A stretch of DNA of 64,000 nt from Kudoa neothunni. Its lineage: Eukaryota; Animalia; Cnidaria. Made by a program: the position numbers and the translations under genes. The DNA lies in contig OZ199838.1 in NCBI GenBank assembly GCA_964304625.1, forward strand, positions 2,517,502 to 2,581,501. Direction: 5' to 3'. The notes beneath the pieces are model-generated. The model did no database searches. It saw only the letters and a list, made by a program, of their open reading frames with translations, and had not been told where the DNA came from. Shown here piece by piece: positions 10,358 through 44,241 of this stretch; position 1 is the first letter of the stretch; every line of letters begins with the position of its first letter.

Positions 10358-13300
10358 CTAATGTTTAATAAGATTTGAGGTTTGGGTCGTGTTTTTAGAT
10401 TTCGATTGCATCATATAAGATGGTTTTGAGGCCGATCTACTCATCAATCCGACTGATGAAAGAGCGTGAGTTCTCATTGTAGAATTTGACAATACAATAA
10501 TCAAGAAAAAGAATATTCCCTGGGAAGCATTGGTTATAACGAAAACCAATTCTCCTTTCCCACCATCGTCAATGAAGATTAAATATTGGAATATCAATGG
10601 CAGACCCAAAAGAATCGCTAAGAAGAATATCTGTTTGGCCTTGGATAGGGTTGATCCACTTTTACCCCTTTTCTTTTCCGCTCGTCTCAAATTGCAGATT
10701 ACATATATACAAACGAACACACTAAACAAAACAACAACACCGCTAGGTATTGTTGTTGTGTAAAAACTCGTAGCGCCAGTTACTACACAGCTAAGGAAAT
10801 CAATGAATAAATAGAGTTCAATGACAAGACGTTACTTTGAATTCTTTGCGTAATTGTTCCTCATAAACACAACACACAGCGATGTAATCACTCCTGGAAT
10901 AGCTATAAAAAATTCTTAAATGAAAAATCAAGGTATATCTATATTACCCCAAGATAGTGCTAAACATAATTTGAAGACAATTCCAGGAATTTTCTTCATG
11001 GTAAAAATAAGCGTATGGAATAATAAATAGGTGTTGAGCAAGAAGGAATAATAAACCGTTTGCAACATTACATGAAGACTGATCGCCAAAGCGAAACAGA
11101 CCTTTGGTTTATTTTTAAAGATATTAATAGAAACAAAGAATGCTTGTAGGAAAAACAAAGAAATGCATAATCCAATTTGTGCTTTAACACGCATAGTTCT
11201 TCTTGTTCTAAAATCAAAATATGAGTTGAGACTGCTGAACATGATAGGTAATCATGATTACTCTGAGGTGATTAGACAAATCAATGTTAGAAATAAACAG
11301 ACCAACGATATTACTGCTAAACAAAGAGAAACTTCGGTTTGACGATATTTGTTAGCATCAGACGAAGTAGCATCGTCCCTCTCCCTGAAATCAAACACCA
11401 CAGCATAGCTTGTAGTATGATTACATGAGCAAGTGACATTTATTCGATTTTGGGGCAGTTCGGTCCTACTGAGGGGATAACAATGTACTTGTTCCCATTT
11501 GAGTGTACTTCCTAAACAGTGAATTATATTTTGTTAACTAGGAGCGTAATTTCTCGTAAAATAATGTAGTAATTTAAATATACTGTTTAATGTACAACAT
11601 TTGGTGTATAGGACATCGGCAGCATTATTAATAATCTGGCTGAATGTAAAATTAATCTTTTTATTCTCTTGGTTTTTAATTTTCAAAACGATAATATCAC
11701 CAGCTACCATCACATTATCCTTGGACTGAGTTACCACAGGTTGGGCTTTAGTGATAGCCAAGGCAACCTGATTTTCAGCAGTTGGGGTATTGGGAGTGTT
11801 ACTATCCAGTGTGTCTATTTGAATGGACATGGTAGTTTCAGAATCACTTGTTGTGGTACTATTTTCGCTCCTATTTTTAGCAGTTAATGGTGTACACATT
11901 ATTGTATAAATACTTGGTTGAATATTGAATCACATTAGAATCTTCAGCTACATCAAATGCTTTAAACTTAAAATGATCATTAGAAATTTCCTCAGTTTTT
12001 TCCATATTTAATATGATGTCATCGAGAATGTTAACAGCCTGGAAAAATTTCCTAAAATATCATAATTATGGTGTACCAAATAGCAGAAAAATACTCTTCT
12101 TTGTTTTCGACTATCGCAGGAGTAGTAGTTTCTTGGGTATTACCAGTTTCTGGTTCAGGAGTTGTTTCCTCCTTTGCATCACCACTTCTATCTAGATTCA
12201 AATATATATTTTATCGATCACAATATATAAATTATTTACCGTTCAAAATGTCAATCCATGCAGTGCTAATTTCGGTCACAGACTAAAATTATTCATTGGA
12301 AATAATTTTCAATGGGATAATATTACTATTTTTTTATCTTCATCCAATAATTTTAATTTGTTTTTATTGAAAATGCTTACATTATTAAATATTTCGGTCC
12401 ATCTTAATTCTACCATCATATAAATATAAATGTATATATTATTATTGCAAACTTATATCAAAATCCAATTTTTGTCGTTGTTCAAGGTAGGCAGAATCAT
12501 AAAAGAATGTGTAGAATATTTTAGTGTTGCGTTGACCAAATGAAATTTTGCATAGCTTATTTGGGCACAAAACCGTTTTAAACCCGTTGGATTTCTCCTC
12601 AGGTTGTAGATTTCCGTCGGCTAATGTCCAATTCAAACTAATTTGGCTATAATCCTCTACTAATGTGATTTCCAAATATAGTTCGCCATCCAGAAAATAA
12701 TTTTCAAATTTGAACTGTGATCTCACTATAAAGTTAATTTATATCTACCGATTGTTAGCACAAATTCACCTTTATCAATATCTAATGATTTTTCCTCCGA
12801 AAATATTACAGACTTAACTTTTACGACACAATCTTTCTTGATATCGTAAACAAATTTGGCGTCGCATTTACTTTCCACACATGAAACTAATTTATTAACA
12901 CTTTGTTCCCCAGTGATACCTTTAACATTTTTATCATCACTGCACGCAATTGTTAGATTCAATGGAAATTTCTGGTAAGGTTCATCGAGAACAAACTTTA
13001 AATTTAACGATCCCGAATCAAGGTTGTGGTCGACTTTATACGCAACTTTTGCTACAAATAAAAAATAGTTCGATGTTTAATTATTAATCTATTATTTTAC
13101 GTGGGGTATAATCATAGGTGTAGGTCTCAGCAAATTTTTCAGATGTTACGGATATCGTTACTGGATTATAATAATCATTCATTGATAACTCAGTTGTGCA
13201 TACACCCTTATCGCAGATAACGTTCTTATCAGACTCAACGAGGTTAGAATCGTCTTTGGCATTATTTACTAGGTATTTGATATCTAATTTTATTGATGGA

Positions 13301-15039
13301 ACGTACTTTCGTAATTTCCAACTAAGCGTAACAACTAATCCATCGGTTTTTCTAGAAAAAGAGATAACTTCTAATTCATTTGATGCTAAATTAATTTATG
13401 AATTAAAATAATTTTGATGAAACAAATATATATACATCCAGATATTTTGAATGTTTTTGGAATGAGCATATCTGAGTTGAACGTAAGATATGTGTCATCA
13501 TTAGTAATACCATTTTCTATCGTAAAATCGCAAACATTTTTATTGCAGTTAATATCTTGAGTAGATTTATTTGGAGACAAATCGGTTGAATTATTATTAT
13601 TCATCAATTTGTAATGATTTATTTTAATTTTATCAAATTCTCTATCCATTATGAACATAACTTTTAGGTCATTCCTATCTTCACTATATGCAATATCATA
13701 AGGATATATTCCTAAATAGATTAACATATATTATTATTGTTAAATTATTATTAAACGATTTTAATGATTTTAATTTCAAAAAAAATATACCTTTACCAAT
13801 TTCGATAGATTTTTCTTCGGAAAATATTGCTGAGTTCACTCTAACTTTACAATCTTTGGTGTAATCGTAATCAAACGTATGTACGCATCTTTTGTTTGTG
13901 CATGGAATCTTTTCTACTGAAATATTCTCATTGCTAAATTTGTAATAACGTTTATCGTCACTGCAAGATATTTCCACGTTAGCCGAAAACGCATTATAAA
14001 GTTTATCAATCGTAAAAGTGAGAGTTAAATTTTTCCCCTCAATATTATGTTGAATTTCACATTTTGTCTTTGCTAAATGTTTAAATATGAAAACAAAATA
14101 TACACAGTTATTTTGATCTACGTGGGGAAAGAATATGTGAGTAAGATTGAACGAGTTTATTCGATGATAATTCCAATGTACCAGGATAATAATAATCGTT
14201 AAATTCAATTTTTATACTGCACACTCCATTTTTACAAGAAATTTCCTCATTTTTTGTAACTTCGTTAATTCCGCCATCTTTTGATGTATACTTAGTTTCT
14301 ATTGAAATCTCGGGAAGATGTTTTCTCAGTTTCAAACTGTAGCTAACAGCAAAATCTTCAACAGTTTTGGTGAAATTCATAACATTGAGCAAACTAGAAG
14401 CTAACATAATTTAATTTAAATGTAAGAATATTTCTCCAAATAATTCTTACGTCCTTTGAGTAATAAATCTCGTGGCATAAGCATTTCCGATGAAATAGTT
14501 ATATAACCATCTTGTTGAAGGGTGACACCTTCGATTTTCAGTTCACATATATTTTGTAGGCATTGAATATCTTGGGTGATTTCGCTCGACTTTATATTTG
14601 CTTTACTTAAGCCAAATATTTTATAACCATTAATAATAACTGATTCAACGTTTTCTTTCAATTTGATCATTATTTTCATTTCCCCATTTTCATTAGAATA
14701 TTCATAATCGTAGGAGTAAGTTTCTATCGTAGAAAAATAACAAATATTTAGTAATTCGTATATTACTTATCATTATATAATATCCATATTCATATGGTGA
14801 TTCATATTTGCGCCTAATCGCCAACTCCCTTTTGGGATCTATGTTGGTCAATGTGAAGGTACAAACTCCTTCTTCACAATCAACCGGGGTTAATGGTTCT
14901 TGTTGTAGTTCACTTTCACCACCTTGTTTAACAATGAATGTATTTGGTGCATAAGAGGCAGTTATCTTTAATAGTCTAAATTTAATTTTTAAATTTCCAT
15001 CGCTTGGCCAATAATCCACCAATGTTTCCTTTCTTCGCC
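10358..15039 (-). CDS. adhesion GPCR: 8 proximal FN3-like exons, GAIN/GPS and secretin-family 7TM (5' end probably further upstream)
   Basis: Splices cleanly in frame. GPS: KCCTLNRSTLKWEQVHC...VTCSCNHTTSYAVVF (~11390-11600). Seven hydrophobic helices with family-B signatures (CFALAISLH, LSWAIPG, LLGLPLIF, FVITNASQGIFFF). Stop TAG at 10358-10360. Confidence 0.9.
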
Positions 15040-16775: not shown

Positions 16776-18028
16776 CTGTAGAAATTCGGCGCGGAATTTC
16801 AAAATTATTCACGTATATATTTGCATAGTTAAATTGATCACACTTTTCCGGAATCGGCTCTTTAAATTCGCAAATTCCCTGGTTGCAGTTTAACTCTGTA
16901 ATTGTACTGACAGGACACTCGGTGAAACTGTTTGTGATATAAGATATTTTGATTTTGATTTTTTTTACATCGACGTCAAGAATAAAAGTATAAGATATGG
17001 AATTATCTTCCAAAAATATTCGTACATCGTATTTAAATTCACCTATTTAATTCATATATTTAATGAGAAACAAAATATAATCACAAATTTCGGTTTTTGT
17101 TGTAATTAATTTGTTTTCAAAGGAAACTTGTATTTCATTTTTTTGATACATATCAATGTCGCTGAGTACCCCAACGCAAAAAATGTCGACACATTTTATG
17201 TCGATTACAGCACTTATTTCAATAGGATTGTTTTCACTGTTTGGAGCTGTTATTAAAACCGTCTTAGTGAATTGATCTGGAGTGCTACTTATCCGAGTTC
17301 CAGTTAAATATAACGTATGATCTAAATAAATAGTTCTAGTGTAAAGTAGATTAGATTCGACTGCATTTGTTGTGAAAATCGCTACAAATAATAATTATTG
17401 AATAAATTTGCATATAATATAGTTACAGTCTCTAAATATTGCAGTATTGGTTGGTGTCTCATCGATAGAAACTATATTACCGTCTTGAGAAATATTGACT
17501 GAAATATTATCACAACTAGAATCATTGGAACAACTTGTTCCATTAGTTTCAAAACATTTATTTTTCGTAAAATTTGTAGTTTCATTTTCTAAATTTCTGT
17601 TTAAATAACAATATTTTTTATCATTTTTTAAAACTAACGATTTATCATCATTACTAACAGTGAGGTAATCAATTTTTTTCTTTATAGCTAAAAATAATCA
17701 ATATAAAAAATTTTATAATGAATAAATATTGACTAACCTAATTTTTTACTAAATGGGAGTCTTGATGGACCTATTACCTCTTCTTTGTTATAGATTTCAG
17801 CATAGAAATAATTGTTATCTTGTGAATTGGATATAACCACATTATAAGTGGAACAATTGATATTGACATTTGACTGGTTTTCACAACGACATGCCACATT
17901 TTCGTATATTTTATTTTTGAGTTGGAACATGTAAATGCATTTCAGTGGATCAGACGGACCCATTGATACTTCTATCATTATTTCCTCAATCGTATATGAT
18001 AATAATTTCATTTTGTTGAATTGAAGTT
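16776..18028 (-). CDS. block of ~4 Cys-containing FN3-like domain exons of the surface-receptor array
   Basis: Acceptor at 18029, phase-1 donor at 16775. Domains resemble the GPCR-proximal ones (e.g. LNCNQGICEFK vs INCNKNVCDFT). Confidence 0.7.
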
Positions 18029-18230
18029 CTAAACATAATTAATTTTACTACAATAAATGACTAACTTTATGTGTATATATACAATCACTTTATTTAAAAA
18101 AATCGAGTAACTTGGTTTAAAATGTTTTGCATTTGAACATAAACGAATTATTAATTAATAATGATATGGTTTTTTATTTTTAAATGTAATGCATTATAAT
18201 TGAATATTTATGATAAAAATTTTCGATTAA

Positions 18231-20548
18231 CCCTTTCATGCCCAAATTTTTTTTCGCTTGGAAAAAATATATTCACTTAATTATACGTTATTTATTAATT
18301 TTATAAAATTGCAAAAGTTTACAACACGTTTATTCGTATTCTTTAAGATTAAATAAAAATGTTCACTAGGGTGAACATTGTTCGCATGAACGAACAAAAA
18401 CAATTTATTTTCTCAGAAATAATGCTTTTCGATTCTTTTCAATGATTATGATATAAATAAAAATAATTTCAGTATTTCACTATACAGCATGGAACGTTAC
18501 ATTTTTTACACAAAAATTGTGTATTCCGTTGACATAGTCGACATCTACTTTTCGAAGAATCTATTTCAGTGTAGTGCCCAACATTGTTAAACTTTATAGA
18601 TTTTGACAAAGTAGAATTTTTATTCTTTGGGGTGTAATTTGGATGCAATTTATTCGAGTTGTCAATAGAAGGACGGTTATGCTTCGTTGCTGTAACGGAT
18701 TTTTTAAGATATATCAAATCTTCGGTCAACAATTCAATAAAAGAGAGAAAATCTAATATAGCTCTATCAGGGATGCAACTTTCCGTTGAATTTAAACGAT
18801 AAATGAGCCAATCGTTGACTATAGCTGTATTCAATCCCCAGAAGAATATCCACATATAATATTTACGGCTTTTATGATATAATTAATACAATGCCATCAA
18901 CATATCGGATAGGTCAACTCCACCCATATTTTTGTCGTATTCGGTTACAACATCCGGACAAAGAATTGACAATAATTTCTTCAATTTTCGATCAAATCTC
19001 TTCACTAGTCCGATAGGTTCTGGCGACGAATGCGTCGAAGATAAAGTAACGATGAAGCCATCACACCATTGGGTGATGGCAATACCTTTGTTGACATCGT
19101 GATAACTTTCATAGGATTCACGCTCTTTTTTAATTCCTTTTGCGGAGTAAGAGTTCAATTTTTGATCCTATTTCTCCGAAAGGTCCCAACGGAATATTTG
19201 TTTCCTTTTTCAAATATAGCTCCATAGATGTAAAGAAGTTTTCAAAGTACATTAAGAAAGTTTCACAAGTTGGAAGGGTCTCCGATAATTTGATGACAAA
19301 ATCGCCTGAAACTAAATCACAGCTATTTTTAACGACAGGAGGTTTCCTATCGCAAAAATGGAAATCTTACACTATACCACTAACGTCACATCTGGAAAAC
19401 ACTTTAAATCCCCATTTTTTAGCTTCTTTGGAAGATATTGTTTAGATTTGCATTTTCCCTTAAAGGGATCATCTGTTCGTCAATAGAGTGACATCTTTCT
19501 GGGTTTAACTTCAATCAGGCAGGTCGAATATGTTCTAGGAATGATCTAATTTTGACAAATCTATCATATCCTGGCAAGTTGGCATTGACTACAATGTTTT
19601 GGTTGTTGTAAAATGGAGATATCGTAATAGTTGTTCAAAACGATTCCTTAAAAAACAGTCAGATACTTTTGGATAGTTCGAAGATTTGCTCTAATAAGAG
19701 CGATAACGAGATAGTTTAACAACACCCATCAGAATTATCACTCCAAGAAACGTTTCCATTTCAGTAGAGTCCGTTACAAAATTGTCGCCACATTGGGTTA
19801 CATATAGGTTTGATTCATTACATATTAATTCAATCAGTTGTTGACTAAAGAACAGCTTGAAATAATCATACGGACGATATAATCCAACATTGATTTCAAA
19901 ATCTTGTTTTTATATAACTTTATTCGGTAATTTTAACCAGATTCCTTTTTTAAACCATTTGAAAGTTGAATCCATAACACCAGCTTCAGAATTATCTGAC
20001 GAATCTTCGTCAACAACCGATGTTTATGATATATAGTCATCTTCAAAAGATATATTAGGCTCTGAAACATCAACATCTTGTATTACAACTACTTCAATGA
20101 TGATCTGACCGTTTGGTTGCTTTGAAATATTCAAATCGTGATCCACTCCCACTCAACATGATTTTTGGACATGTGCCCAATGTTCACCCTAATGAACACG
20201 TGTTTTTGTGCTTATAACTGTTTATATTTTTATAATTAGAATGTTTACATATAATATACATTGTCTTTAAGCTTGCACATACAACATATATTTGTTCTGG
20301 TTCTATTGCCTTAAAATTGTGCTGTTTTTTAGGGTAAAAATAATACAATTTTAAAAATGCAAAATAACGAAAAGTTTCACTCTACACAAAATTACATATT
20401 GCATTATCTGTTAAAAAATATATTAAAAAATAATTATATATGTATAAACTTTAAAATATTTTAACTGAATAAAATATAATAATTTTTAAATACATATATA
20501 GTTAAAATAAGTCGTTGTTTATCCTAGTGAACATTGGATACAAAAGGG
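18231..20548 (-). mobile_element. full-length decayed piggyBac (PGBD3-like) with TTAA target-site duplication
   Basis: TTAA at 18227-18230 and 20549-20552. Termini CCCTTTCATGCCC and (reverse complement) CCCTTTTGTATCC. Internal inverted repeats AATGTTCACTAGG / CCTAGTGAACATT. Minus-strand fragments EYDKNMGGVDLSD and CRLC...LCKKCNVPCC, with many stops and frameshifts. Confidence 0.9.
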
Positions 20549-20608: not shown

Positions 20609-23099
20609 CTGATCTGAATATTTTGCAATATAAAGCATTGCCATCGTGAACAAAACAAATTTTCACCACTTCATCTGCCTTTATAATATATTCTACTGCT
20701 TCCCAGGATTCATCACCATTACATTTTTCATGATTACAAGTAGTAGTGATTGGCTCTTCGTCCTTGGGAATAAATGTATAATTCTGATAAGTAGAAATTT
20801 TAAGATTTTCTTTTAATAAATCGCCTTTCTTATAATAAAGTTTGACTTTTGAATTCATACCATCACTAACTTGCATGTGAAAAACATTCTCCTATATTTT
20901 ATTATATTTATTTATTAATTGTATATGTTGTTAATTACATTCTCTTTTTCAGGATAATAGAATTTCATGTAATGTGGATATGTAGCAGAATCTGTGATGA
21001 ACGAAATGTGGACCAAATAATTTTCATTATATAGTATGGTTTGCTCATTGCGCTGATCCTGAGCGTCATATTTCGTTGCGTCAAATTTCCATTCAAGGTT
21101 TCCCTCATTAATCTGGCTGGAATACCATGCATCCATTATTTCGTTGGGACCATATGAATTTTTAAACAGATTTTTTATTCTATCACTAGCATAGGTACCT
21201 TCTACAAATTGAAAATTGTTGGTATCACCACGTCCTATGCAAAATATATCATTAATAAGAATTACGAACAGCTAAATTTTAAAAATTCATAAAAATGTAT
21301 ACTTATTACGTAGGTGTCAGTGTTTTCATTTTCAACAATTTTTACCTTCAGTATTATTTCTTTAATTTCGTTTATATTCAAAATTTTGGAGGTGTCAAAT
21401 GAAATATTATCACAATCTATAGGATCTGTACTTGTTGCAATTTCTTCTTGTTTGTTGTCATAATTGAGTTTAAACAGTTGGTAGGTACACATGATATTTG
21501 ATGAACCATGTTCTCCAAATGAGCTGCGAAAGATCAAATTGTCATCAACCCACGTATAACTCCAAACAGACGCTATTGGAACTAGAAAAAGTTTCAGAGT
21601 ATTTGATTGCATATTAAAATATATTACTAGGGCCGTATTCCACACTATCCATATATTTACCACACGTCAAATCATATTTGTAATATTTGTTTCTTTTGAT
21701 TTCAAATGATAGTCCATTATTCTTTAAAGTTGATGCACAAGTTAAATCGCTTTCATCGCAACTAGTTGAAGGAATAAACTCTTCGCTATCAGAACTTTTG
21801 GATAAAAGAGAATATCTACAATTATTTCCATTAATTGTACTCAAATTGTGTATAATTTTAATCCTTCCTGATTCGTAATGTATTCTTTCGATTAGATTTC
21901 TACCAACATAAAAAGACCCGCTGTATAACGTTTGGCCTTCATGTGTAACAATTATATCGTTGTTTTTGTCCAGATCATGAAACTGAATAATATTAGAACA
22001 ATCGCCGTAATATACTTTTGAATTGGAAGCATTATCAACATTTTTAGTATTAACGCTGAATCTACAAATTTTTCCTGTTATATATTTTCTTTCTGGTATA
22101 ATCGAGACAGTATTTAATTCATATGAAAACTTGTAGGACTGTTTAGGGAAACCTATTTATCAGTATAAAATAATATTATAGTAATAAAATGCAAATTACC
22201 AATATTTATTATTTGGGAAATCACGCTACCATTAGATTTTGTTATTTTTATAAAAAGCTGAGGTTCAAATACATGTGGTATGGAGAGGATATTCGAACCT
22301 GATGTTAAAGTTACTGTGTTATCGGATCTATTTTTGTCATAAACAAAAATGTTATCACCAATTTTTTGTCCTACAATATTCTTTATTTCAATTTTTGATA
22401 TTCCATTTTGTTCGATTGTTTTTGGAATAGTTAACTGTATCATTTCATGATTAGTATCAGCAGTAATGTTTTCATCAGATTGTTCTATAAACATTATTTT
22501 ATTCTAACAAAATTCAATAACGTAGTTACCATGTATTACATTCTTTACCAAATTTATTTCCGAATCTACGATATGAATATTAACTGTCCAACTGTCACTT
22601 TTTTGAGGAATTAGAATTTCTTTTTCCTCACATTTTCCTGATTCAATAGGTCCCTGATCATCAACTTTAAAATTACACATCTTATTAACCAGAAATCCAT
22701 CTTTTGATTTTAAACTAAATTTATCCGATTCAATTTTGACATTGATTTTTGTTTCTTCATACACTATAAAATTTATTATTCATTTTTTAAATATGGATGT
22801 TCTAAAATGATAATTACAATTCCTAATTTGGTCGAGATAGTTCAATTCAGGAATCCAAATGAATAATGTGTGTGGAGCGAAATTTGTTATTGGTATAGAA
22901 TGCTTTGAACATGATTTGAGATTATTTTTGTTTGTTCCATCGTAAGAGTTGTATGTAGCCGCGTTATTATATTCTTCGATGGCCTCATTCATTCTGATTA
23001 TATAATAATCACACAACAGTCCCCATTCATCTTTTATATTTGACCAAATATGTAAAATACCAGAATCAACGTAATGATTGAATTTTATGTCGTGTGGAT
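20609..23099 (-). CDS. block of ~8 FN3-like domain modules (7 exons) of the surface-receptor array
   Basis: Open exons joined by 40-80 nt GT-AG introns, mostly phase 1. Phase-1 acceptor at 23100 and phase-1 donor at 20608. Confidence 0.7.
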
Positions 23100-33189: not shown

Positions 33190-33320
33190 TGTAACACAAT
33201 GTCCGAACTGGGGTTTGAACTCGCGTTATTAGCATTAAAAGGCGATGATGCCATACCGTTTTGCTCTCGATCGGACACCTTCGATTGTTGGATTACAACC
33301 CTTATAATTCACATGTTACA
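33190..33320 (-). repeat. 131-bp element with TGTAAC...GTTACA ends containing a tRNA-like A/B-box core (copy 2)
   Basis: Minus strand has an A-box-like AGCAAAACGGTATGGC and a B-box GAGTTCAAACC; 6-bp terminal inverted repeat. Confidence 0.55.
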
Positions 33321-34323
33321 ATTACTTAATTAATTAATAATTTCTTCCCTATTTAGATATTGTAAATTTTTCTAATAAGGATGAAAATAATTAATGTACC
33401 AATAAGGAGTAGTTTCTTCGAGTTCTCCAAAAAGATCTATAGCATTATCCCCGTAATATGGTGTATTTACCGGCTACCAAAATTCAGCATGATGTCGTGA
33501 ATTTGTTCGGCCGATTTTTTCTTAGATATTGTTCAATCATTATATAAAGTTTCAGTATATACAAATAAATCAATTTTTTTTGTTTCGAATGTTTCCTAAA
33601 TTCGTTCGTTATAATCCTTTATATGTCGCATTAATCTCCTTTACGATACTATTTTAGGCATTGTCTTCCTGTTTTAACCAATTTAAATTAATGTTTTTGT
33701 AGAGTTATCCTATTTAGTTATTCAAAAATGTTTATTAAAATATGTGAAATCTACTTATTTGCCAATCTAATCAATTAAAAATGAATCTTTTTATTTTGGA
33801 AATTTTGACAATAAACAGATTTAAAATTGAAAAAACAATGTTTATAAATAATTTTACAAAAGAATTATGGTTTTTTTAGTTTAAGATTTTTTTGTAGACA
33901 ATTTTCTATCAAGAAGTAGATAATATTTTACGTTTTATGAAATGAGCTAAACATACTATTTGATTTTGATTAATATTTTTTATATCTTCTAGCAAATTCT
34001 TTTTCTATTCATTCAAAATGTTTTTTGTATATGCATAAAGTTAAAAATCATTTTAACGATAATATATCTGTTTCACAAAACGTTCAAAAATATACCTTAG
34101 GCGTAACCAGAACAATTAATATAAAGCTTGTATAATTGCATGTTCTGTTACAATATTTTTAATGTTTATGATTTGAATGTTGTTTATTCTTTTATAATTA
34201 AATTTTAACACTTTCATTATTTCATAGCATATTCATTTATAAAGGGCTTATTTGGCGTTGATGCCACCATAAACACTCATTTTATAAACTACAAAAACAC
34301 GTGACTATGCAAATGGATTAAAG

Positions 34324-36837
34324 CAGCGCTTCCCGATTGGGGGTTGGGGGTCGAGGGTCCATAAATGAGTCAAAGAAAAAAATGTATATCCTAGCATTGT
34401 AAGAAGGTTTTGAATATTGTAACGGTATGATATATTATAAACGCAGTTCCTACTAATTTATTTAAGGAAAATTATATTTATTGTTATTTTATTTAAAAAA
34501 ATGATGCCGAATGTAATAGTTTCGCTAAGAACATCTTTTGTAATGTATGTGAATCCGAATTGGCAACATTCGGATCAAGCTTTAATCATAATTATGTTAT
34601 TACTGATTTTATGTTCTCCCGAAATTAGCTTACGTTTTAGATTTAACTTTAGTTTAATATTATATATACATATATTCCATAAAAATATGACAATTAATTA
34701 TAATTTAATTTGATTTAGACAGATGCTAATAATAGAAATACTAGGATCTCTTGTTGGATATGACAATTTAATTATTAGTTTTAAATAGTCTGTAACTATA
34801 AAATATTTCGATAAATCTTAGATAAGTCACGCGAACCTAATTTCACCCTCTTTTACGTTTGATTTAATCCTAGCCTTTGTTTCAACATGGTAAATCATCA
34901 GAAAATTAGGAAATGGAATGAAGAATACACCCAGTATGGTTTTTCCAAGAGAGTAATTGATGAAATTGACAGGTCCCAATGTATTCTATGCGATATATTA
35001 TTTTCCAATTCAAGTTTGAAACCATCAAAACTACATGAGCATTTAACAATTAAGCATGGTGGAATATCATGAGCAGGGGATGATTCTCAATCTTTGGCCA
35101 CTATCAGGATAAAATTCGATTCAAGAATGATTCTTCCAACGCTAGGTTTTGCTCCATTTTGTAAATCATTTCTTTTGGCGTCATATAAAATTGCGAAGAA
35201 GAAAAAGCCACACACCATTGCCAAAACTCTTATTAAACCTTGTATTTTGGAATCGGCACGAATTATTTTGGGCCCAAATGCCGCTAAAAAGCTTCAAATG
35301 ATTCCATTCTCAAACAATATTATTCGAAATAGAATTGATGATATGAGTGCAGACGTACTCGATCAAGTTCTTTCAGATGTGAAAGCCTCACCTATAAAAA
35401 TCTCCATCCAGCTGGACGAGTCAACCGACGTGGCTAATTGTAGCCAATTAATTGCTTTCGTCCGCTATCATACATCAAAAGTTACCGAGGAAGAGTTTCT
35501 CTTTTGTAAACCCTTAACAAAAACTACCACTGCGAAGGATATTTAAGACATGGTCCATAACTTTTTTGATAGAAACAACATACCTTTCCAGCTTATTGGA
35601 TCTATTTGTACGGACGGTGCTACTCTAATGCGAAACCGAATTCCCGACGTTACTATTACCCATTGTATCCTTCATCGATAAGCTCTCATGTCAAAAAAGA
35701 TGTCAGAAACTTTGATAAACGTTATGAACTCTTGCATAAAAATTGTAAATTTTATCAAAGGCAGAGCTCTAAACCACAGACTCTTCAAGACATTTTGCAG
35801 TGACTTGGGTGAAGAAACATCTGCATTTCTGTACTATACCGAAGTCAGATGGCTTTCACGAGGCAATGCTTTAACTAGGTTTTTCGAACTTAGAAATGAA
35901 ATTCAGAACTTTCTATTCGAACAAAAATCTGATCTTGCGCGTACTTTTGAAATTCCCAATTTCTCATCTATTCTAGCCTACTTGGCAGATATTTTTAGTC
36001 ATATCAATGATCTAAATTGCTCTATTCAAGGAAGAGGGATAAATGCTATAGTTACCCGTGATAGACTGCGCTCTTTTAGGGGAAAATTGATGTTATGGAG
36101 ATCCAGAATCGATTGTCAAAACTTGGAGAATTTTTCTTATCTAGAAGAAATCGTTTTGAATGATACGAGCACTGTTTTTGAGGATTTCAAAAAGTATATA
36201 TGCGAGCATTTGGATCGATTGAGAAATTCATTCGATGATTACTTCACCTCTGGAGAAATACAGGAGTCAGAGAGTTGGATCATTAACCTCTTTGCATTCA
36301 AATTAGACAAAATAAATGATAATGACGAAGAAAAAGAAAATCTGATCAATTTGCAAGAATGCGCCATTCCATGAAATTGTTATTTGATTCTAGTTCGCCC
36401 GAACATTTTTGGTGCGTAACTTTAATTCAATATCCTACCCTTTCCAAAAGAGCTCTCCAAATACTGGTTCAATTCTCAACAACTTGACTTTGTGGAGCTG
36501 GATTTTCCACATTTCTGTATATACAAAATAAATATCAAAATTCACTCAATCTCGAAAATGATATGTGTTTATCATTATCCAATAATGAGCCTCGCTTCGA
36601 TGTTATTGTTTCCAAAAAAAGACAATAAAAGAGTCTTACACCGAATTAATTTATTCTTTTAACTACAGTTATTATATTTTTTTGTTATGAAAAGTATTGG
36701 TTCATTTTTGTTTTCGTATAATTTTTGGAAAACTTATGTTCGAATTCAACTAACTCCATTTCCTACTAAAGGTAGATCTGTTTTCAAATTCCTAATTCAA
36801 TGGGGGTCCGAAGTCTTAAACGAATCGGGAGGCGCCG
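34324..36837 (+). mobile_element. hAT Buster/Charlie (ZBED8/SCAND3-like) transposon, transposase pseudogene
   Basis: 15-bp TIRs CAGCGCTTCCCGATT / AATCGGGAGGCGCCG. BED finger (CILC...LKPSKLHEHLTIKH), KPHTIAKTLIKP, SIQLDESTD, TEVRWLSRG, LAYLADIF. Several stops and frameshifts. Confidence 0.92.
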
Positions 36838-36844
36838 CCCTATA

Positions 36845-36913
36845 AGGAAAAAAAATGTTGCGTACATGCGTACTTGCTGAGGCACACGGACATTTCAGCT
36901 TTATATATATAGA
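36845..36913 (-). mobile_element. non-autonomous Helitron 5' end fragment
   Basis: Minus strand A|TCTATATATATAAAGCTGAAATGTCCGTGTG; shares the ACATGCGTACTT motif with the copy at ~57570-57665. Confidence 0.5.
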
Positions 36914-37354
36914 TATATTTAAACTTTTAAAAACAATATTTTAATAAAAATCTTTAATGGAATTAATTACGATAATGTATGAAAATAAGTCACATTTTTT
37001 AAAATAGATATAAACTATCATATCATGTCAAAATTATTTCGAGGAAAATTTTAAAAATAGAGCGTCATGTAGATGCAAGTTTTACTTTTGTTCGTTTAAA
37101 TTTTCAATGAACATTTGGAATATGGGATTAATAAATAAGAATTAGGAAGTGATGCACAAAATAAATGTTGTTTAAGCGCTTATATAATTTTAGATAAATA
37201 TAAATCATGTTCAATATGAAAAAATATTAGTAATTATCAACTGTAATTATATTAATTCAAAGATAATTTTTAAACGACTAATAACAAATTTGTTAACTAA
37301 GTTTTGAAATAATCTAGGTAATTGATGCAATCAATGATGAATGTATCATAGACT

Positions 37355-40300
37355 TTATAGATCGTAAGAAATGTCCTTAGAATTCTTTCTGTAAACAGCT
37401 ATACCTATCACTACCAAAAGTGAAGCCACGACGGGTATCATTGCATATAATCTAAAAGAGATTATCTTCAACAAATATGTATTTTCTGTTACATATAACT
37501 TCCAACAGATCTATCTAATGTCAAACATGAAAACAAAACTAGATATTACGAGTATCTATTCTTTGCTGCATCAAAATTGTGATTTTCTTTATTATCTACA
37601 ATTTTTCTTATTTTTTAGATCATTAAATTATTTATATTCTACTAAACATAATGCTAAAAATATGACATAAAAATTGTTTTTACCCTTCCTCAACCTTTTT
37701 TATTACTTTCTGAACGATATCATCTATTACAATGTTGGCATACTCGCTCCTAATGTTTTCTCCTTCTATAAATTTTTTATTCCTTAAGTTTTATTTATTT
37801 AATTTACTAAAAGTGGATTATTATAATTATGTAATAGATAATTGGAATCCTATTACCCTTTCATTTTACCAATTCTTGAATCTTCGCCAAATATATTATT
37901 AGAAAATAAGGATTATTTAATAATTTAAACAAAATATATTTACATTGAATACTATATGGTCCATAAAGTGAGTGATCTTTTGCTTTCAATTTCAATATAT
38001 AATCCTTTTCTGTCGACAAATTATTGATGTTAACGGTACATTTATTGGCAGAGCATTCTTCATCATCATTACACCACGTAATAATTTCCCCCTCCTCTTT
38101 GTCTCCAATTTTTTCCTGAACCATAAACGGACATATTGAATTGTCATTTTTCCCATCGAAATCCACTTCAATTGTTAAGTCACTACCTTCACCCAACGAA
38201 TGTTTTATTGAAATAGCACCATTTACTAAAAAATATTATTAAACATAAGCTAATTTATTCGGAATACTTGTTTCAATGGAATACTCCTTTTGTTTTTTGC
38301 CATCAGATGGTTCGACTGTCACGTTGTAAGTCGCTCCTAAGTCTAGGTTGGCAATTTTGAACTTAGCATCACACTTGTTCTCGCATGCTCCCATTCCATC
38401 ACAAGAAGCCATATATTTTGGATCTAAGGTCCCACTTTTTTTAACATAAATTCTACAGACCGGCAAAAGATTTTCAGATCCAAGTGGTGTTATTGTAGCA
38501 GTGGAACCCTTTTTGGTGAGTGGTGAAATATTCTCAGTTAAGTTGCTTCCCCCGGCTAAATACACTGTTCAAATTTGATGTTTAAATAAGTTGTTACTTG
38601 TTCGGAATGTTGTTTTCTTTGTATACCGGTTTATCCCAATGTTGGTTACTGTTACAGAAATTACATAAGATGTGCCGGCGAGAAGCCCCTTAATAGGGTA
38701 TGACTCTTCACAGCTAGTGCCGCATTGATCACTCTTATCACAAATAGCCCCCACTTCAGTCGAAAACGTATTTGCTAGGCGTATTGTAATTGTACACACT
38801 GAAGCAGGGGTACTTGCTTTCATAACTTTATAAACGTTAAGTCCGGTAAGGGTGACTTCAGTATCCTTAATGTCTGTTAAAATTATGCCCTTGTCATTTC
38901 CTATAACACATTATTTTTAAAGTTGAATCTAACATTACTTTTAAAGTATTGTTTGAATCCAACGATATCAAACCTTCGTTTTACAATTATTCCAATATTC
39001 TCATTGTCTTCTGTCAAACTGATATCACCATCTTGACAAAGATGGAAGCACTCTTTTTCCTCCTCAGTACATCCATTCAGAAAATTACCTTCTTGATCTG
39101 CTCCGTTCCCATCTACCTTAAATGCCTTGATATGGCATATCTCCCTGTTGTATGGACCAGGAGAGAATTTTATCCGAAGTTTTCTATTGTTATCTTCAAC
39201 ACCTGAAACAGAATAAATGATCTCAGATTTTAGAGGGGACTCAGAATTCAAATAAGTATTATTAATATAATATAATATATCAGGCCATAACAATGTTGAA
39301 CTGATATTGTAATAACTTATGTATCTATCAATTAAGAGAGCTGCGAATTTTTCTTCTGGAGTCTCAGAATTAGCATCGATTTTTAAGTTGTCCTTTTCTG
39401 TACTGCTGTGTTCATCATCGTTACCGTCATTTTGTATATTCCATGCTGTTATTGAATTCGATTTGTAAGAGAACCTAACTTTTCCGTCAGCATAAGATAT
39501 AGCATAAGTGTTATCTTGTTTATAACCTGTAAAAAATATCGTTGAAAATTATAGTATATAAATATTATCATTTTTAATTACTCATTATTATTGCGAACAC
39601 TTGCGTCTTTTTACACCTTTTGGCTTCCTCTTTGTCTGTACCAAAACAAACTGATATATATCGATCAACTTTGGAATTAAGATATCCGACGTTAAGATCA
39701 CTTTTGGTACATTCCACCAAACAATCACCTTCATCTTCGTCTGTGCAGAGTTGTGGCTTCTTAAATGTAGTTCCTACAAAATTAGCCATTTTTATCACAC
39801 AATTGTTTGCGGTAAAATCTTTCAATGTAACGGAAAACTTCTCAGTTTCTTCACCCGAAGATTGTATAAACTTTTGTTCAAGTTTTCCGCGTCGAGTAAA
39901 AGCTAAAAATGTGTATCAATTGGGGTTTTTTGTGGAAGTTACCTGGTATCGACAATTTGAATGGTGCCGATTTTTCATCTGCATAAATCATTAACCTGTA
40001 GTTACACTTATTATCGTATATATCAGCAAACTGAATATCATCGCATTGTTTAACATCATCATTATTACAACCAATGCAAGACTTTATTATTTTCGTTGGT
40101 GAAACTATTTAAAGATAATGAATGTAAAATGGAACGATTACTTTCGTCTGTTTCATGTTTATATAACTGATAGTGGCATTTTGTGCCGCTAATATCATTC
40201 ATAGATTCTTTAGTTTGTATAATGAGCTTGTTCTTCTCGGAATTAGTTGAAATTTTAAATTGAATTATTTTACCAACTATTTATTATTTATTCACATATT

Positions 40301-43300
40301 AAATATTTGAATAATGAATGTTACTTGTTTCTTTATTTTCAATAATTTGAATATTATAATCTCCATTGGGAACAATTTTGAGAGTATAAGTTGTGTGGGA
40401 GTTAAGTCCAATAATCTCGAACCGTGAGTTGCACGATTTTACACACAACTCATTTACTGAACAAATTGCAGGATAATATAAATCGTTGTTCTCTTTTATG
40501 TAGATTGTACAAGTGTTTGTTGAAGTTGTAGAGCTTTCAGCGATTGTGATTCCATTCGCACTGGTAGAGACTGAAGCATCCAGAATGGACAGTTGTTTTG
40601 TAGCTGAAAATAAATTTTAAATAACATTTAATATTATAAAATACTTATTTTATGGAAGAAATATTTCTTTGGTGAGTAATTAGGTATCTTAGATATGGTT
40701 ACCATAATATCATTGTGTAAATAAGTTGGGTCAGGAGTAATGTTAACCTCCCCAAAGCTACAAGCAGGCGATGGATTATTTACATTTTTCCTTCCATTTT
40801 CAATAACTAATGGAGCATAAGTGTTCCAAAACTTTACCGAACATGCAGCAGCCTCACCAATAAGATTCCCACCATTTTCGTCTTTATCTTTTCCCCTAAT
40901 GTTTATTTGAATTTTTCCTTCTACCGTTTTCACTGGAACATCGTTTCCGTGTTTAACTAAAAATTTTACTTTATTTATTAAATAGATCTAAATATTACGT
41001 ATGTGTATATTATTTTGATAACCGATCGAAGGTTTCATTCCCAGTTTAAGCACTCTTATTTTAACCGCTTTTACATTACTTTGCATATTTCTAAATGTAT
41101 AGCTGTTGCACAGACTGAAGAAACAGTTTTCTTTATTATCACATCGATTCGAAAAAAACCTGTTGGAATTTGCCGCAGTGGCATCTATCCATTCGAATGT
41201 GCACATTTCAGATGGCTCTGAATTAACCATTTGAACTGTGAATGTCTTCCTTGGTTCATCATTTTTTAGTTCGTAATAAAATCTACCGAAAACTGGGGCC
41301 TGATTTTTAACAAATGTATTGTCGTAGAAATAATGCAAGTCAAAATATTCTGGGCAGCTTATATAATAATCTTTTACTAGCTCATCGAATTGAAACGAAT
41401 AACTTCTAAAATCACCTTGGGAGCTGCAAGATTCTGTTCCTCCCACAGATTGCTCTAACAGGGTATCTTTGTATGCTTTGCACCTTGATGAGCATTTATT
41501 TAACCCTAATTTTATTTTGTCGTCTTCTAATTCAGCTATGCGGGTAAGTTCCTCAAAATGATCTTAAGAAAAATAGTAAAATTTATAACGAAATTTTATA
41601 TTACCCATATAGTATGAATAGACCTTTCCTATTTTTATTTGGACTACTGTCGGTTTTATTGGCTCTTGATCTTTTACAGGCGATACAACAGATGATGATA
41701 AAACAGGCTGATGGGAATCAACTTTTTCTCCATTTTGGCCGTCGTTATCTTCTGCCGGTAGATTTCCTATGTCTCCTTGCGATTTTGCAATAATTCCTCT
41801 ATTAATACCCGATTTTTTAGCAATTTTTTCAACGATAGTTTTAGTATCTGAATAAGTGACAGAGATATAATTTAATTTATTCTGACTATCAGGATCAATG
41901 TAGAATTTATCCGAAAGGTCGTCACATTTTCTTGTTATTACCCCATTATTTCCAACATTTCCATAACTTGAAAGGTCATTATTAAATTTTTGGACTGTGC
42001 ATTCTTGTTTGCTTTTATCAGTTAGGTCATTATTTTTGAATTTTACCATGTACTTTTGTGCTGATTGAATGTAATATAGACTCATATCCTGGTCACCTTC
42101 TTCAATACCACCTATAAATATAAAATTAATATTTCTATAAAAAAGCAATTACATTCTATGTCTGTATCTTTTGGTTTAGAGTAATCTACATTTATAACTA
42201 CTAGTTTATATGTAACTTCACAGTTGAGAGAACTCCATGAGAAATCAATAGTGTTAGATCCACTGGTTACAGCGGGTTTGCAACCGCCATTCAAACAATC
42301 CTTGATAATTTTCTTAGATCCTTGTTCCAGTAGAACGTATTCCCAAGAAGTTCCTAAAGTTTGACCTGTAGAAGCAGCAGCCATTGTAGCTGTTGTCTTC
42401 TTAAGCTCTTTACTTTCTGAGATGTCTAATGTAATATCGATTCCACCAGCTAGTTAAATTCATTATTATTAAATTTTATGAGTAAATTACTAGATGCCTC
42501 AGTGCTTTCAATACAATTATATCCTTTCGGACAAACAGTTAGTTTGTAGTTTGTTTTGGGATCAAAATTTATTATACTGAAATCGCTATTACAAGCATCA
42601 GAACAAAATTTTTTTTCTTCACAAGTAGCAGGATACATCGGTGTATTATTTCCAGTGGCTGAATAGTAGAGATCGCATTTTACGTCATTACCTCCTCCAT
42701 CGGAAAATGAATTAGATAGATTTAGAGTTAATTTATTATGTTGGCCCGGAGTAGTGCCTGGTGTAAAAGTACCACTATGTGCTAAGTCATCCCCTATTTA
42801 AATTTATAACTATAGAATTAATGTTTAAAGTTACCTTTAGTTTTGAAATAATAATAACGGTGATAATAATTAACTTCAGGATGATCTAATGTTGTAAGTC
42901 CCCTTATTTTAATTTTTAAAATATATTCAGTTAATGGTATAAGCGAGCTCAAACTTATTTGATGAAAAGAGTTACACTCCCTATCACACGTAGGATCTTT
43001 CCAATTATCTTCAATTCCCAGATTTTTATCAATTATTTTGATTTCTTCGATAGCTGCTTCTTTTTTAGCATCATTCTCGCCCTCATTTTTATTTAGACTA
43101 TCCAAATTTACAGTTGCCACATCTTTACCGATAGAAGTAACCGTAGTTTGACCGGTTGCAACTATAAAATTGATAAGACACATTAGATACATTAAAATTT
43201 ACATGTTATAGTTTGAATAAACTCTTTGGGTGTTATCTTATCTAAGGGTTTTACAAGTACTTGAGCAAAATTGAAAGTTTGATCATGATACAAAGTTGCT

Positions 43301-44241
43301 TTATAACAAGGTTGAAGACAGGGCCCAGCTCTATTCACAGCTGAGCAACTAGAGGAAAAATGAGAGTCATTCATATCTTTTATTCCAAAATAGCAAATTT
43401 GCGAAGGTTTTGGATTTTGGAGTATAATTGTATAATATTTGTTATCTTTTGACCCATTTGCAATAAACCAATCCTCATCGAGGTTTTTTGGATTCAATAA
43501 AATTTCTGGTGTCTCATGACCAACTTCAACCACATACGTAGGTTGATATGATTTAGAAGGTAGTGTAATAGATTTGACTGCAAAAAATTCAATGGACGAT
43601 CCTTGACTGTGTCCTGAAGCAGAACCTTTGACAGTCAACTCGCTGCTTTCTTTGCTTTGAATGGAAAGAGTGAATGCATTATTTGCTTTGATTGCTGTAA
43701 AAAAACTCTTTATAAAAAGATCTATTTAATTATATTAAAATATTATTGAATAAATTAATATACCTTTTATAGCAAAAACCCTCTTGATAGGACAGTTTTT
43801 TACATCCTTCTCATTCATACCTTGACACCATTTTATATACTTAATGGTATTGAATTCTTGACCACTGAGATTAAATTCGACTTTTTTACATTTATAAGTA
43901 CACATCTTTAAATTTTGATCCATTTGTGCACATGTTATGCTATTAGTGCCGACAAAAACGTCAACTTTCACCCCATTTTGGCTATAGTATTGAAGTGCAC
44001 AATGTCTGAAGCTATTCTCAATATTGTATCCAGAAAGTGAAATGATATATTTCTTTGAACTTTGCAAAAAATTCACTTTCATTATATTATTATCAATATT
44101 ATCAGAGAATATATTTTTTACACATAACACTAATAACGAATAATATATATATATATATATATAATCTCAACGAAAATTACATGTTAAAATGACGAGATAT
44201 ATTGTAGAAGTATATCGTTGTCTCAAAGACAATCTCATCAT
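37355..44241 (-). CDS. large type-I membrane / extracellular protein with ~20 Cys-rich FN3-like domains (5' block of the array)
   Basis: Signal peptide MMRLSLRQRYTSTIYLVILTLLCVKNIFS (44241-44181 spliced to 44129). About 17 exons, open down to 37944. FN3-type F-strand motifs (IKGLLAGTSYVISV, IANLDLGATYNVTV, IIGLNSHTTYTLKI, LSSLIPLTEYILKI). TM exon LYAMIPVVASLLVVIGIAVY-RKNSKDISYDL* (37451-37355). The 37943-37600 linker does not splice cleanly. Confidence 0.8.

What the first reader, a model, noticed from the sequence alone, without database searches (positions are those of the whole stretch)
10358..44241. 34-kb modular surface-receptor locus: ~45 FN3-like cassettes leading into one adhesion-GPCR module
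Seen: six co-oriented exon blocks (44241-37944, 32205-31592, 28894-28316, 23099-20609, 18028-16776, 15039-12453) encode related ~90-100 aa beta-rich domains. Every block upstream of the GPCR ends in a phase-1 GT donor (37943, 31591, 28315, 20608, 16775). Every downstream block starts at a phase-1 AG acceptor (32206, 28895, 23100, 18029, 15040). The whole chain can therefore be read in frame from the only clean signal peptide (44241) to the GAIN/7TM. Known: characterised adhesion-GPCR ectodomains use EGF, cadherin, Ig, LRR, TSP or Calx-beta repeats; I do not recognise this Cys-decorated FN3 array. Inference: this is either a giant ~4,500-5,000 aa aGPCR or a variable-ectodomain / constant-signalling cassette system, conceptually like clustered protocadherins, Dscam or Hydractinia Alr clusters, possibly for host or self recognition.
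Basis: partly seen in the sequence, partly recalled or inferred. Interest (0 to 1): 0.9.

Follow-up and report, generated by a model that had tools for sequence, protein, structure and literature searches.

The report
Two neighbouring Kudoa surface-receptor genes
The 34-kb "giant receptor" is two separate genes of the fish parasite Kudoa neothunni, a membrane protein made of about 20 fibronectin-like modules and a roughly 2,800-residue adhesion GPCR with 23 module exons; both belong to large gene families that I found described nowhere.

Summary
The exon blocks, their phase-1 edges and the GPS/7TM end are real. The one-gene reading is not supported.

- **Block 1 (44241-37355)** is its own gene. 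It has a signal peptide, 16 Cys-stapled FN3 exons, a stalk exon and a TM-plus-tail exon ending in a stop. At least 58 intact paralogs lie elsewhere in the genome, and none of the five I fetched sits next to a GPCR.
- **The adhesion GPCR** starts at its own signal-peptide exon (32345-32288), which is conserved in all copies. It runs through blocks 2-6 to the stop at 10358: 33 exons, about 2,800 aa.
- **Three tandem paralogs on another chromosome** match it exon for exon. They keep the splice sites, show dN/dS of about 0.44, and lack block 1.
- **The "blocks"** are stretches of one gene separated by introns swollen by insertions, one holding a piggyBac remnant.
- **No splicing cassette system.** Among the tandem paralogs, however, the last module, GAIN-like region and 7TM are 98-100% identical, while the distal modules are 49-100% mosaics.
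- **No RNA evidence.** Three RNA runs gave zero reads, which is no test.

Both families look undescribed. I rate this a new variant of a known kind.

The parts
44181..44241 (-). Gene A exon 1: ATG plus signal peptide, 61 nt, phase-1 donor GTAATT
   Evidence: Sequence read. The joined frame is open. The upstream and exon-1 region aligns to paralog loci.
37944..44129 (-). Four exons are double length (519, 522, 564, 588 nt).
   Evidence: Splice model. AF2 model of exon 38599-38898 has pLDDT 77 and matches FN3 domains (Foldseek prob 1.0, TM 0.6-0.7). Each exon has a counterpart at 45-80% aa identity in five other loci.
37684..37765 (-). Gene A stalk exon (GENIRSEYANIVIDDIVQKVIKKVEEG), phase-1 acceptor
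   Evidence: Conserved without frame-breaking indels in six paralogs, while the flanking intron carries 1-5 nt indels. In frame with the TM exon.
37355..37451 (-). Gene A terminal exon: TM helix LYAMIPVVASLLVVIGIAV, tail YRKNSKDISYDL, stop TAA
   Evidence: The open frame and the stop position are conserved in six paralogs.
32721..37354 (.). Spacer between gene A and gene B. It holds transposon-like ORFs on the + strand (35073-36371).
   Evidence: Homology to gene-A paralog loci ends at about 36850-37130. Homology to gene-B paralogs begins at 32720/32905. The ORFs have no Pfam hit at E<=0.01.
32346..32720 (-). Conserved 5' flank of gene B (putative promoter or 5'UTR), about 80% identical in the three C2 paralogs
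   Evidence: blastn and MAFFT alignment.
32288..32345 (-). Gene B exon 1: ATG plus signal peptide MDKIFIFLTILIYSVKIIS, 58 nt, phase-1 donor GTAATT, then an 82-nt intron to 32205
   Evidence: ATG, open frame and donor are conserved in all four paralogs. The joined frame is open.
31592..32205 (-). Gene B modules 1-2 (block 2)
   Evidence: Colinear counterparts in three paralogs with splice sites kept; dN/dS 0.64-0.76.
28316..28894 (-). Gene B modules 3-4 (block 3)
   Evidence: dN/dS 0.20-0.59.
20609..23099 (-). Gene B modules 5-11 (block 4, 7 exons, one of double length)
   Evidence: The frame is open through mixed-phase introns.
18886..19909 (-). Decayed piggyBac-type transposase remnant inside the block 4 to block 5 intron
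   Evidence: Pfam DDE_Tnp_1_7, E 4e-13. This intron is 2.6 kb here but about 250 nt in paralog A.
16776..18028 (-). Gene B modules 12-15 (block 5)
12453..15039 (-). Gene B modules 16-23 (block 6). A C-x4-C beta-sandwich type that contains an internal three-exon duplication.
   Evidence: Self-similarity at 31-39% identity. AF2 pLDDT 87.7, seven strands. Ig/FN3-like matches, VIA Z 7-8. The last module has dN/dS 0.15.
11584..12409 (-). Gene B stalk and GAIN-like region: five exons, roughly 12409-12327, 12282-12240, 12191-12094, 12038-11914 and 11870-11584
   Evidence: Splice sites were chosen where GT/AG and frame hold in both the window and the paralogs. No Pfam GAIN hit. The fold was not tested.
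11262..11511 (-). Gene B GPS motif (CSCNHT|TSYAVVF) plus TM1
   Evidence: Pfam GPS 26.2 bits. Aligns to ADGRL3 TCSCNHLTNFAVLM.
10358..11234 (-). Gene B TM2-TM7 and C-terminal tail, three exons, stop TAG at 10360-10358
   Evidence: Pfam 7tm_2. A profile of 11 paralogs hits only adhesion GPCRs in the PDB, best ADGRF1 at 7.4e-7. Seven hydrophobic helices.

Best explanation
The region holds two independent, co-oriented genes of the myxozoan parasite Kudoa neothunni.

**Gene A (44241-37355).** It encodes a signal peptide, about 20 disulfide-stapled FN3 modules, a short stalk and a single TM helix with a 12-residue tail. It is one of at least 58 intact paralogs.

**Gene B (32345-10358).** This is an adhesion GPCR of about 2,800 aa. 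It has its own signal peptide, 23 module exons (Ig/FN3-like beta-sandwiches), a GAIN-like region with a GPS motif (H-T|T followed by the tethered-agonist-like TSYAVVF) and a class-B2 7TM.

**The six blocks.** They exist because the A-B spacer and four introns of gene B are long. At least three of those introns are longer than in paralog A because of inserted DNA, and one holds a piggyBac remnant. The other introns are about 40-55 nt.

**Inferred mechanism (not shown).** The long module chain binds a host or parasite surface or matrix ligand. Force on, or loss of, the N-terminal fragment at the GPS exposes the tethered agonist and activates G-protein signalling.

**Family pattern.** The tandem paralogs keep the signalling end 98-100% identical while their distal modules are recombined mosaics. 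This points to gene conversion plus diversification of binding specificity.
For: **Organism.**
- G000 has four contigs. 40,260,978 minus the three large contigs leaves 18,219 bp. That equals the mitochondrial contig of the K. neothunni assembly.
- That assembly is reported as 40.2 Mb, N50 12.0 Mb, 30.4% GC, median intron 49 bp (PMC12239612).

**Gene B is one unit.**
- tblastn finds exactly one colinear counterpart for each exon of blocks 2-6 plus GAIN/7TM in each of three tandem paralogs on C2, at 52-92% aa identity. Block 1 has none there.
- At least 21 of the 23 module exons are open in all four copies. One further exon has a stop inside its tblastn alignment in two copies, probably an alignment-end artefact.
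- Block-edge donors and acceptors are conserved.
- dN/dS is 0.43-0.45 at dS of about 0.44 over about 2,180 codons.
- Inter-block gaps vary in length between copies. Block 4 to 5 is about 250 nt in paralog A against 2.6 kb here. Block 3 to 4 is about 800 nt against 5.2 kb.
- A signal-peptide exon with conserved ATG and phase-1 donor lies 82 nt upstream of block 2 in all four copies.
- Paralog B's block 2 starts only 3.2 kb after paralog A's stop, so the gene must start there.
- The 33-exon model is open and has 7 TM helices.

**Gene A is separate.**
- Its 16 exons match exon for exon at five other loci on C1, C2 and C3.
- Homology continues about 0.8-1.1 kb past the last FN3 exon, through a conserved stalk exon and a TM-plus-stop exon.
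- No 7TM hit lies near those loci.
- At least 58 full-length copies of exon 41000-41560 exist in the genome.

**Folds.**

**Adhesion-GPCR identity.**

**Mosaic identity pattern.**
Against: - There is no transcript evidence at all. Three RNA runs labelled with this species gave zero reads on 14950-20900, which is no test because the organism was not shown to be in those runs. The genome paper also reports few parasite RNA reads.
- With canonical sites, the junction from gene A's last FN3 exon to its stalk exon reads TAA. It reads TAA in five copies and TGA in the sixth. How gene A reaches its TM exon is therefore unresolved.
- The same phase-1 donor at 37943 could in principle reach 32206 in frame.
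- The GAIN fold was not tested.
- 7tm_2 and GPS pass Pfam thresholds only narrowly on single exons.
- Several short introns of gene B have alternative in-frame sites (25-27 nt against 42-72 nt) that cannot be settled without RNA.
- Only two modules were folded. Blocks 2-4 are called beta-sandwich by analogy.
Confidence: 0.8

Rival explanations
1. One reading: one giant gene. The donor at 37943 splices to 32206, so a 4,500-5,000 aa adhesion GPCR runs from the signal peptide at 44241 to the 7TM.
For: The blocks are co-oriented. Both sites are phase 1 and give an in-frame Phe codon. The canonical junction from that donor to gene A's own stalk exon gives a stop codon, so another acceptor is conceivable.
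Against: - Three close GPCR paralogs have no block 1 and start within 3.2 kb of the preceding gene.
- Five gene-A paralogs have the same donor but no GPCR downstream.
- A conserved signal-peptide exon sits directly before block 2.
- A conserved TM-plus-stop exon sits after block 1.
Confidence: 0.04
2. One reading: a cassette system in which alternative ectodomain blocks are spliced onto one constant GAIN/7TM unit, like clustered protocadherins or Dscam.
For: Nearly all module exons are symmetric (phase 1 to phase 1), so skipping any of them keeps the frame. At family level the distal modules vary while the signalling end is constant.
Against: - Every exon has a 1:1 colinear counterpart in each paralog.
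- Neighbouring exons are not similar alternatives of one another. Only 9 of 253 within-gene pairs reach hhalign probability 50.
- I found only one signal-peptide exon for blocks 2-6.
- The blocks are separated by insertions that are absent from the paralogs.
Confidence: 0.03
3. The window's GPCR copy is a silent or decaying duplicate. The functional genes are the C2 tandem copies, and this copy is accumulating transposon insertions in its introns.
For: Three of the four inter-block introns are much longer here than in paralog A, and one holds a piggyBac remnant. RNA runs gave zero reads (no test).
Against: All 33 exons are open and the splice sites are intact. dN/dS against the C2 copies is 0.44 at dS 0.44, so the copy has been under constraint for most of its history.
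Confidence: 0.1

Closest known systems
Adhesion GPCRs with Ig/FN3-type ectodomains, for example the sponge Amphimedon adhesion GPCRs (fn3, Ig, I-set plus GPS plus 7TM; PMC4302439), and vertebrate ADGRV1 as a model of a very long repeat ectodomain
   Same: A signal peptide, a long chain of repeated extracellular modules, a GPS motif with a tethered-agonist-like sequence, and a class-B2 7TM. The 7TM profile retrieves only ADGRF1, E5, L2-4, G2, G4 and D1 from the PDB.
   Different: - The 23 modules are so diverged that none passes the Pfam fn3 threshold. Most do not recognise each other by profile.
- Position -1 of the GPS is Thr, not Leu.
- No HRM or other known accessory domain was found.
- The host organism is a myxozoan with a drastically reduced gene set.
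- The tandem paralogs share an almost identical signalling end but have mosaic ectodomains.
Fibronectin type III domain (PF00041), as in receptor tyrosine phosphatases (PTPRB) and bacterial S-layer FN3 proteins
   Same: The gene-A module model superposes on FN3 domains at TM 0.6-0.7. Its profile's best public hits are multi-FN3 proteins: Vallitalea FN3/S-layer protein at 4.7e-39 and fish PTPRB-like at 7.1e-37.
   Different: - The module carries 3-4 conserved Cys (C...C-x5-7-C-x3-C) in and before the E-F region.
- It stays below the Pfam gathering score (20.3 against 25 bits).
- Close relatives (45-48% identity) appear only in a few unnamed metagenome or Logan contigs.
Clustered protocadherins, Dscam and Hydractinia Alr
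   Same: A repertoire with variable extracellular parts and a constant signalling part, clustered in the genome.
   Different: Here the diversity lies between whole genes and probably arises by duplication and gene conversion. It does not arise by promoter choice or mutually exclusive splicing. There are no tandem alternative exons.

Membership tests
Adhesion GPCR (class B2) | Secretin-family 7TM (Pfam 7tm_2) | tested here: met
   The last exon scores 21.0 bits against a cut-off of 20.6. A profile of 11 paralogous last exons hits 20 PDB sequences at E<=0.01. All are adhesion GPCRs, best ADGRF1 at 7.4e-7. Hydropathy shows seven helices.
Adhesion GPCR (class B2) | GPS motif immediately before TM1 | tested here: met
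   PF01825 scores 26.2 bits against a cut-off of 22.5 on exon 11511-11262. The motif aligns to ADGRL3 TCSCNHLTNFAVLM.
Adhesion GPCR (class B2) | Autoproteolysis consensus H-L|T/S | tested here: inconclusive
   The sequence reads C-S-C-N-H-T|T-S-Y-A-V-V-F. His at -2 and Thr at +1 are present, but -1 is Thr instead of Leu. Cleavage cannot be judged from sequence.
Adhesion GPCR (class B2) | GAIN domain fold enclosing the GPS | not tested
About 250 aa lie between the last module and TM1, a suitable size. No Pfam GAIN hit was found on exon ORF 11537-11929.
Fibronectin type III (PF00041) | Pfam gathering score | tested here: not met
   The best of 39 exons scores 20.3 bits against a cut-off of 25. 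Only 2 of 39 match at E<=0.1.
Fibronectin type III (PF00041) | Seven-strand FN3 beta-sandwich fold | tested here: met
   Gene-A module: Foldseek prob 1.0, TM 0.6-0.7 to FN3con, tenascin, monobodies and sDscam FNIII. Gene-B module 21 (exon 13385-13101): seven strands, but its matches are shared among Ig-like, CBM56 and FN3 folds at Z 7-8, so FN3 is not singled out.
Splicing cassette receptor locus (clustered protocadherin or Dscam type) | Tandem alternative variable exons joined to shared constant exons | tested here: not met
   Exon correspondence among the four paralogs is 1:1. Neighbouring exons are not mutually similar. I found one signal-peptide exon per gene.

The most novel reading that the evidence does not exclude
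Kudoa keeps a repertoire of adhesion GPCRs (at least 14 loci) and at least 58 single-pass FN3-array proteins as a recognition system. Ectodomain modules are shuffled between paralogs by gene conversion, while the last module, GAIN-like region and 7TM are held identical. This would give many binding specificities wired to one signalling output, used for host-tissue or self/non-self recognition during the cell-in-cell life of a myxozoan.
Probability: 0.25. Interest if true: 0.75.

Novelty: new variant of a known kind. Interest (0 to 1): 0.55.

Why it matters
Myxozoans are economically important fish parasites with very reduced genomes. The published K. neothunni annotation has 5,316 predicted proteins with a median length of 348 aa. 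Almost nothing is known about the molecules at their host interface.

This window shows that two large lineage-specific surface families have gone unreported. One is single-pass FN3-array proteins of about 1,900 aa. The other is adhesion GPCRs of about 2,800 aa. Neither is mentioned in the genome paper, and my full-text searches found no description of them.

These genes are obvious candidates for host attachment, tissue tropism, immune interaction or parasite cell-cell signalling. The mosaic-ectodomain, constant-7TM pattern offers a natural system for asking how adhesion-GPCR ectodomains diversify. The result also warns that phase compatibility between neighbouring repeat genes is not evidence that they form one transcript.

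Tried and rejected
- **RNA support.** The single read-laying run (14950-20900, runs X5-X7 plus DNA run X1) gave zero RNA reads. That is no test, because the organism was not shown to be in those runs. The DNA run covers the stretch colinearly.
- **Own-genome search with PF00002.** It gave nothing because the model did not ring on single exons.
- **Nematode hypothesis.** I tested it because the genome has three chromosomes, about 40 Mb and small introns. The SL1 RNA search found nothing, and only 50 of 13,035 candidates were scored. I dropped it once the contig arithmetic matched the Kudoa assembly.
- **9p8h as a close RPS3 relative.** It was an artefact of a duplicated human chain.
- **My first two dynamic-programming gene models.** They over-called tiny exons in the gaps. 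Only exons confirmed by paralog comparison were kept.
- **Gene A ending by read-through of the 37943 donor.** The hydrophobic tail looked like a C-terminal anchor. I rejected this because paralogs have stops and a 4-nt deletion at varying positions there.
- **A 12-nt micro-exon (37882-37871).** It would repair the TAA junction, but only 4 of 6 paralogs have the needed GT (by eye). Unresolved.
- **Profile-profile link between gene-A and gene-B modules.** None was found.
- **ESM Atlas look-alikes for a block-4 exon.** Scores of 0.77 to Ig-like and fn3 clusters are a lead only.
- **Pfam on the ORFs at 35073-36371.** No hit; they resemble hAT only by a motif I recalled from memory.
- **Joined proteins.** Joined CDS models were assembled only inside scripts, to check frame, length and hydropathy.

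Full report
**What the sequence is.** The window is AT-rich (about 29% GC) and eukaryotic. Its introns are tiny, mostly 33-55 nt, of the GTAA...TAG type. It lies at C1:2517502-2581501 of a 40,260,978-bp assembly in four contigs. The three large contigs are 17,154,348, 12,040,071 and 11,048,340 bp, which leaves 18,219 bp for the fourth. The published Kudoa neothunni assembly was recovered from a yellowfin tuna sample. It is 40.2 Mb with N50 12.0 Mb, 30.4% GC and a median intron of 49 bp, and its mitochondrial contig is exactly 18,219 bp (PMC12239612). I take the organism as K. neothunni, a myxozoan (cnidarian) parasite of fish muscle.

**Checking the observation.** All six minus-strand blocks exist. 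The block-end donors at 37943, 31591, 28315, 20608 and 16775 are GT. The block-start acceptors at 32206, 28895, 23100, 18029 and 15040 are AG. All are in phase 1. Most exons are 255-330 nt and symmetric (phase 1 to phase 1). Block 4 has four internal introns in other phases but keeps the net frame. There are 16 exons in block 1 and 23 in blocks 2-6, and five are double length, so about 44 modules. The signal peptide at 44241 is real once a 51-nt intron is removed. Pfam finds GPS (26.2 bits, cut-off 22.5) and 7tm_2 (21.0 bits, cut-off 20.6) on the last exons.

**The modules.** Pfam gives only sub-threshold fn3 matches, in 2 of 39 exons (best 20.3 bits against 25).
- An AF2 model of the gene-A exon 38599-38898 has pLDDT 77 and pTM 0.69. 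It matches FN3 domains in the PDB with Foldseek probability 1.0 and TM 0.6-0.7.
- A profile of nine block-1 exons was searched against 1.84 billion representative proteins. It found 252 hits at E<=0.001. The best are multi-FN3 proteins: a Vallitalea FN3/S-layer protein and a fish PTPRB-like protein.
- A few exon-sized ORFs from unnamed metagenome or Logan contigs are 45-48% identical. So the block-1 module is a diverged, Cys-stapled FN3.
- The membrane-proximal GPCR module (exon 13385-13101, aligned with 32 relatives) folds with pLDDT 87.7 as a seven-strand sandwich. Its matches are shared among Ig-like, CBM56 and FN3 domains (Foldseek TM about 0.5-0.6; VIA Z 7-8). It is Ig/FN3-like, but not specifically FN3.
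- The two module types are not demonstrably related by sequence. hhalign gives probability 0.5%, and none of 368 cross-gene exon pairs reaches probability 50.
- Modules of blocks 2-4 were not folded. An Atlas look-up gave only weak Ig/fn3 leads.

**One gene or several: the decisive comparison.**
- The last 7TM exon has three 94%-identical copies in tandem on contig C2, plus about ten distant ones.
- I fetched 100 kb of C2. Every exon of blocks 2, 3, 4, 5 and 6 and of the GAIN/7TM part has exactly one counterpart, in the same order, in each of the three paralogs (52-92% aa identity). No exon of block 1 has one.
- At least 21 of the 23 module exons are open in all four copies. One further exon has a stop inside its tblastn alignment in two copies, probably an alignment-end artefact. 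The block-edge splice sites are conserved. For example, GTATGT follows module 2, GTAAGA follows module 4 and GTAAAT follows module 15 in all four.
- dN/dS is 0.43-0.45 at dS of about 0.44.
- The inter-block gaps differ in length between copies. Block 4 to 5 is about 250 nt in paralog A but 2.6 kb here. Block 3 to 4 is about 800 nt against 5.2 kb. The 2.6-kb intron holds decayed piggyBac transposase fragments (Pfam DDE_Tnp_1_7, 4e-13).
- The blocks are therefore parts of one gene split by enlarged introns.

**Where the GPCR gene starts.** Nucleotide similarity to the paralogs runs about 500-700 nt upstream of block 2. The four-way alignment shows a conserved 58-nt exon at 32345-32288. It has an ATG, a textbook signal peptide (MDKIFIFLTILIYSVKIIS) and a phase-1 GTAA donor, 82 nt before the block-2 acceptor. 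Paralog B's block 2 begins only 3.2 kb after paralog A's stop, so these genes must start there. With this exon the model has 33 exons, spans 21,988 bp and encodes about 2,793-2,806 aa. It has an open frame and seven hydrophobic helices.

**Adhesion-GPCR identity.** A profile of the last exon from 11 paralogs hits only adhesion GPCRs in the PDB, with ADGRF1 best at 7.4e-7. The GPS reads CSCNHT|TSYAVVF against ADGRL3 CSCNHL|TNFAVLM. Several short introns in 12.2-10.8 kb have alternative in-frame sites. I chose those conserved in the paralogs.

**What block 1 is.**
- Its 16 exons match exon for exon (45-80% aa identity) at five loci that I fetched from C1, C2 and C3. No 7TM exon lies near any of them.
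- Similarity continues 0.8-1.1 kb beyond the last FN3 exon.
- The read-through tail after the 37943 donor carries stops and a 4-nt deletion at varying positions in the paralogs, so it is intronic.
- Further on lie two conserved exons free of frame-breaking indels. One is a stalk exon (37765-37684). The other is a terminal exon (37451-37355) encoding a TM helix, the tail YRKNSKDISYDL and a stop at the same place in all six copies.
- Gene A is thus a separate single-pass FN3-array gene.
- Its exon 41000-41560 has at least 58 full-length intact copies in the genome. The module profile has at least 820 candidate exon hits.

**An unresolved point.** With canonical sites, the last FN3 exon leaves a T that joins AA of the stalk exon to give TAA. 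One paralog gives TGA instead. Skipping that exon restores the frame, giving an 1,848-aa membrane form. Which forms are actually made needs RNA.

**Family pattern.** Among the three C2 paralogs, the last module, the GAIN-like region and the 7TM are 98-100% identical. The 22 distal modules are a patchwork of 49-100% identity. Different pairs are near-identical at different exons. This looks like gene conversion plus divergence. It is the only sense in which a variable ectodomain sits on a constant signalling unit here.

**Expression.** This is no test, because the organism was not shown to be in those runs. The genome paper also notes very few parasite RNA reads.

**Literature.** The Kudoa genome paper does not mention GPCRs, fibronectin or surface proteins. 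A full-text search for myxozoa together with adhesion GPCR found nothing relevant. A 2026 Sphaerospora preprint describes other surface families. FN3 and Ig domains are known in sponge adhesion GPCRs (PMC4302439). I therefore rate this a new variant of a known kind.

Noticed in passing
window 37944 | 37765 (gene A); L011-L015 equivalents: With canonical GT/AG sites, the junction between the last FN3 exon and the stalk exon creates a stop codon. It is TAA in five paralogs and TGA in one. Skipping the last FN3 exon restores the frame into the TM exon. This may be a secreted/membrane isoform switch or an unrecognised micro-exon.
   Followed up: partly
G000:C2:10465000-10535000 (L003-L010): There are three tandem adhesion-GPCR paralogs. 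Their last module, GAIN-like region and 7TM are 98-100% identical, while their 22 distal modules are 49-100% mosaics. This is a gene-conversion-like pattern.
   Followed up: partly
window 52475-53307 (-): Exons of 40S ribosomal protein S3 lie here. The best PDB relatives are vertebrate uS3 at about 1e-33.
   Followed up: partly
window 53759-54376 (+): An ORF with a tubulin-binding cofactor C domain (PF07986, 6.5e-11).
   Followed up: no
window 48167-49795 (+): A MULE-type transposase with a ZSWIM RNaseH-like domain and a SWIM finger (PF21056 at 1.6e-29, PF10551 at 1.3e-17). MULE expansion is reported for myxozoans in a 2026 preprint.
   Followed up: no
window 3-1429 (+) and 18886-19909 (-): Two decayed piggyBac-type transposase copies (PF13843). 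The second lies inside an intron of the GPCR gene.
   Followed up: partly
G000:C2 about 10465020-10465220 (L003): A 200-N assembly gap lies directly upstream of the conserved 5' flank of paralog A.
   Followed up: no
L016 (Logan SRR33849685), L017 (ENA ERZ28624939), L027 (ENA ERZ4740346): Short contigs from unrelated public assemblies encode 38-48% identical relatives of gene-A modules and of the GPCR last exon. They presumably come from other myxozoans present as contaminants.
   Followed up: partly
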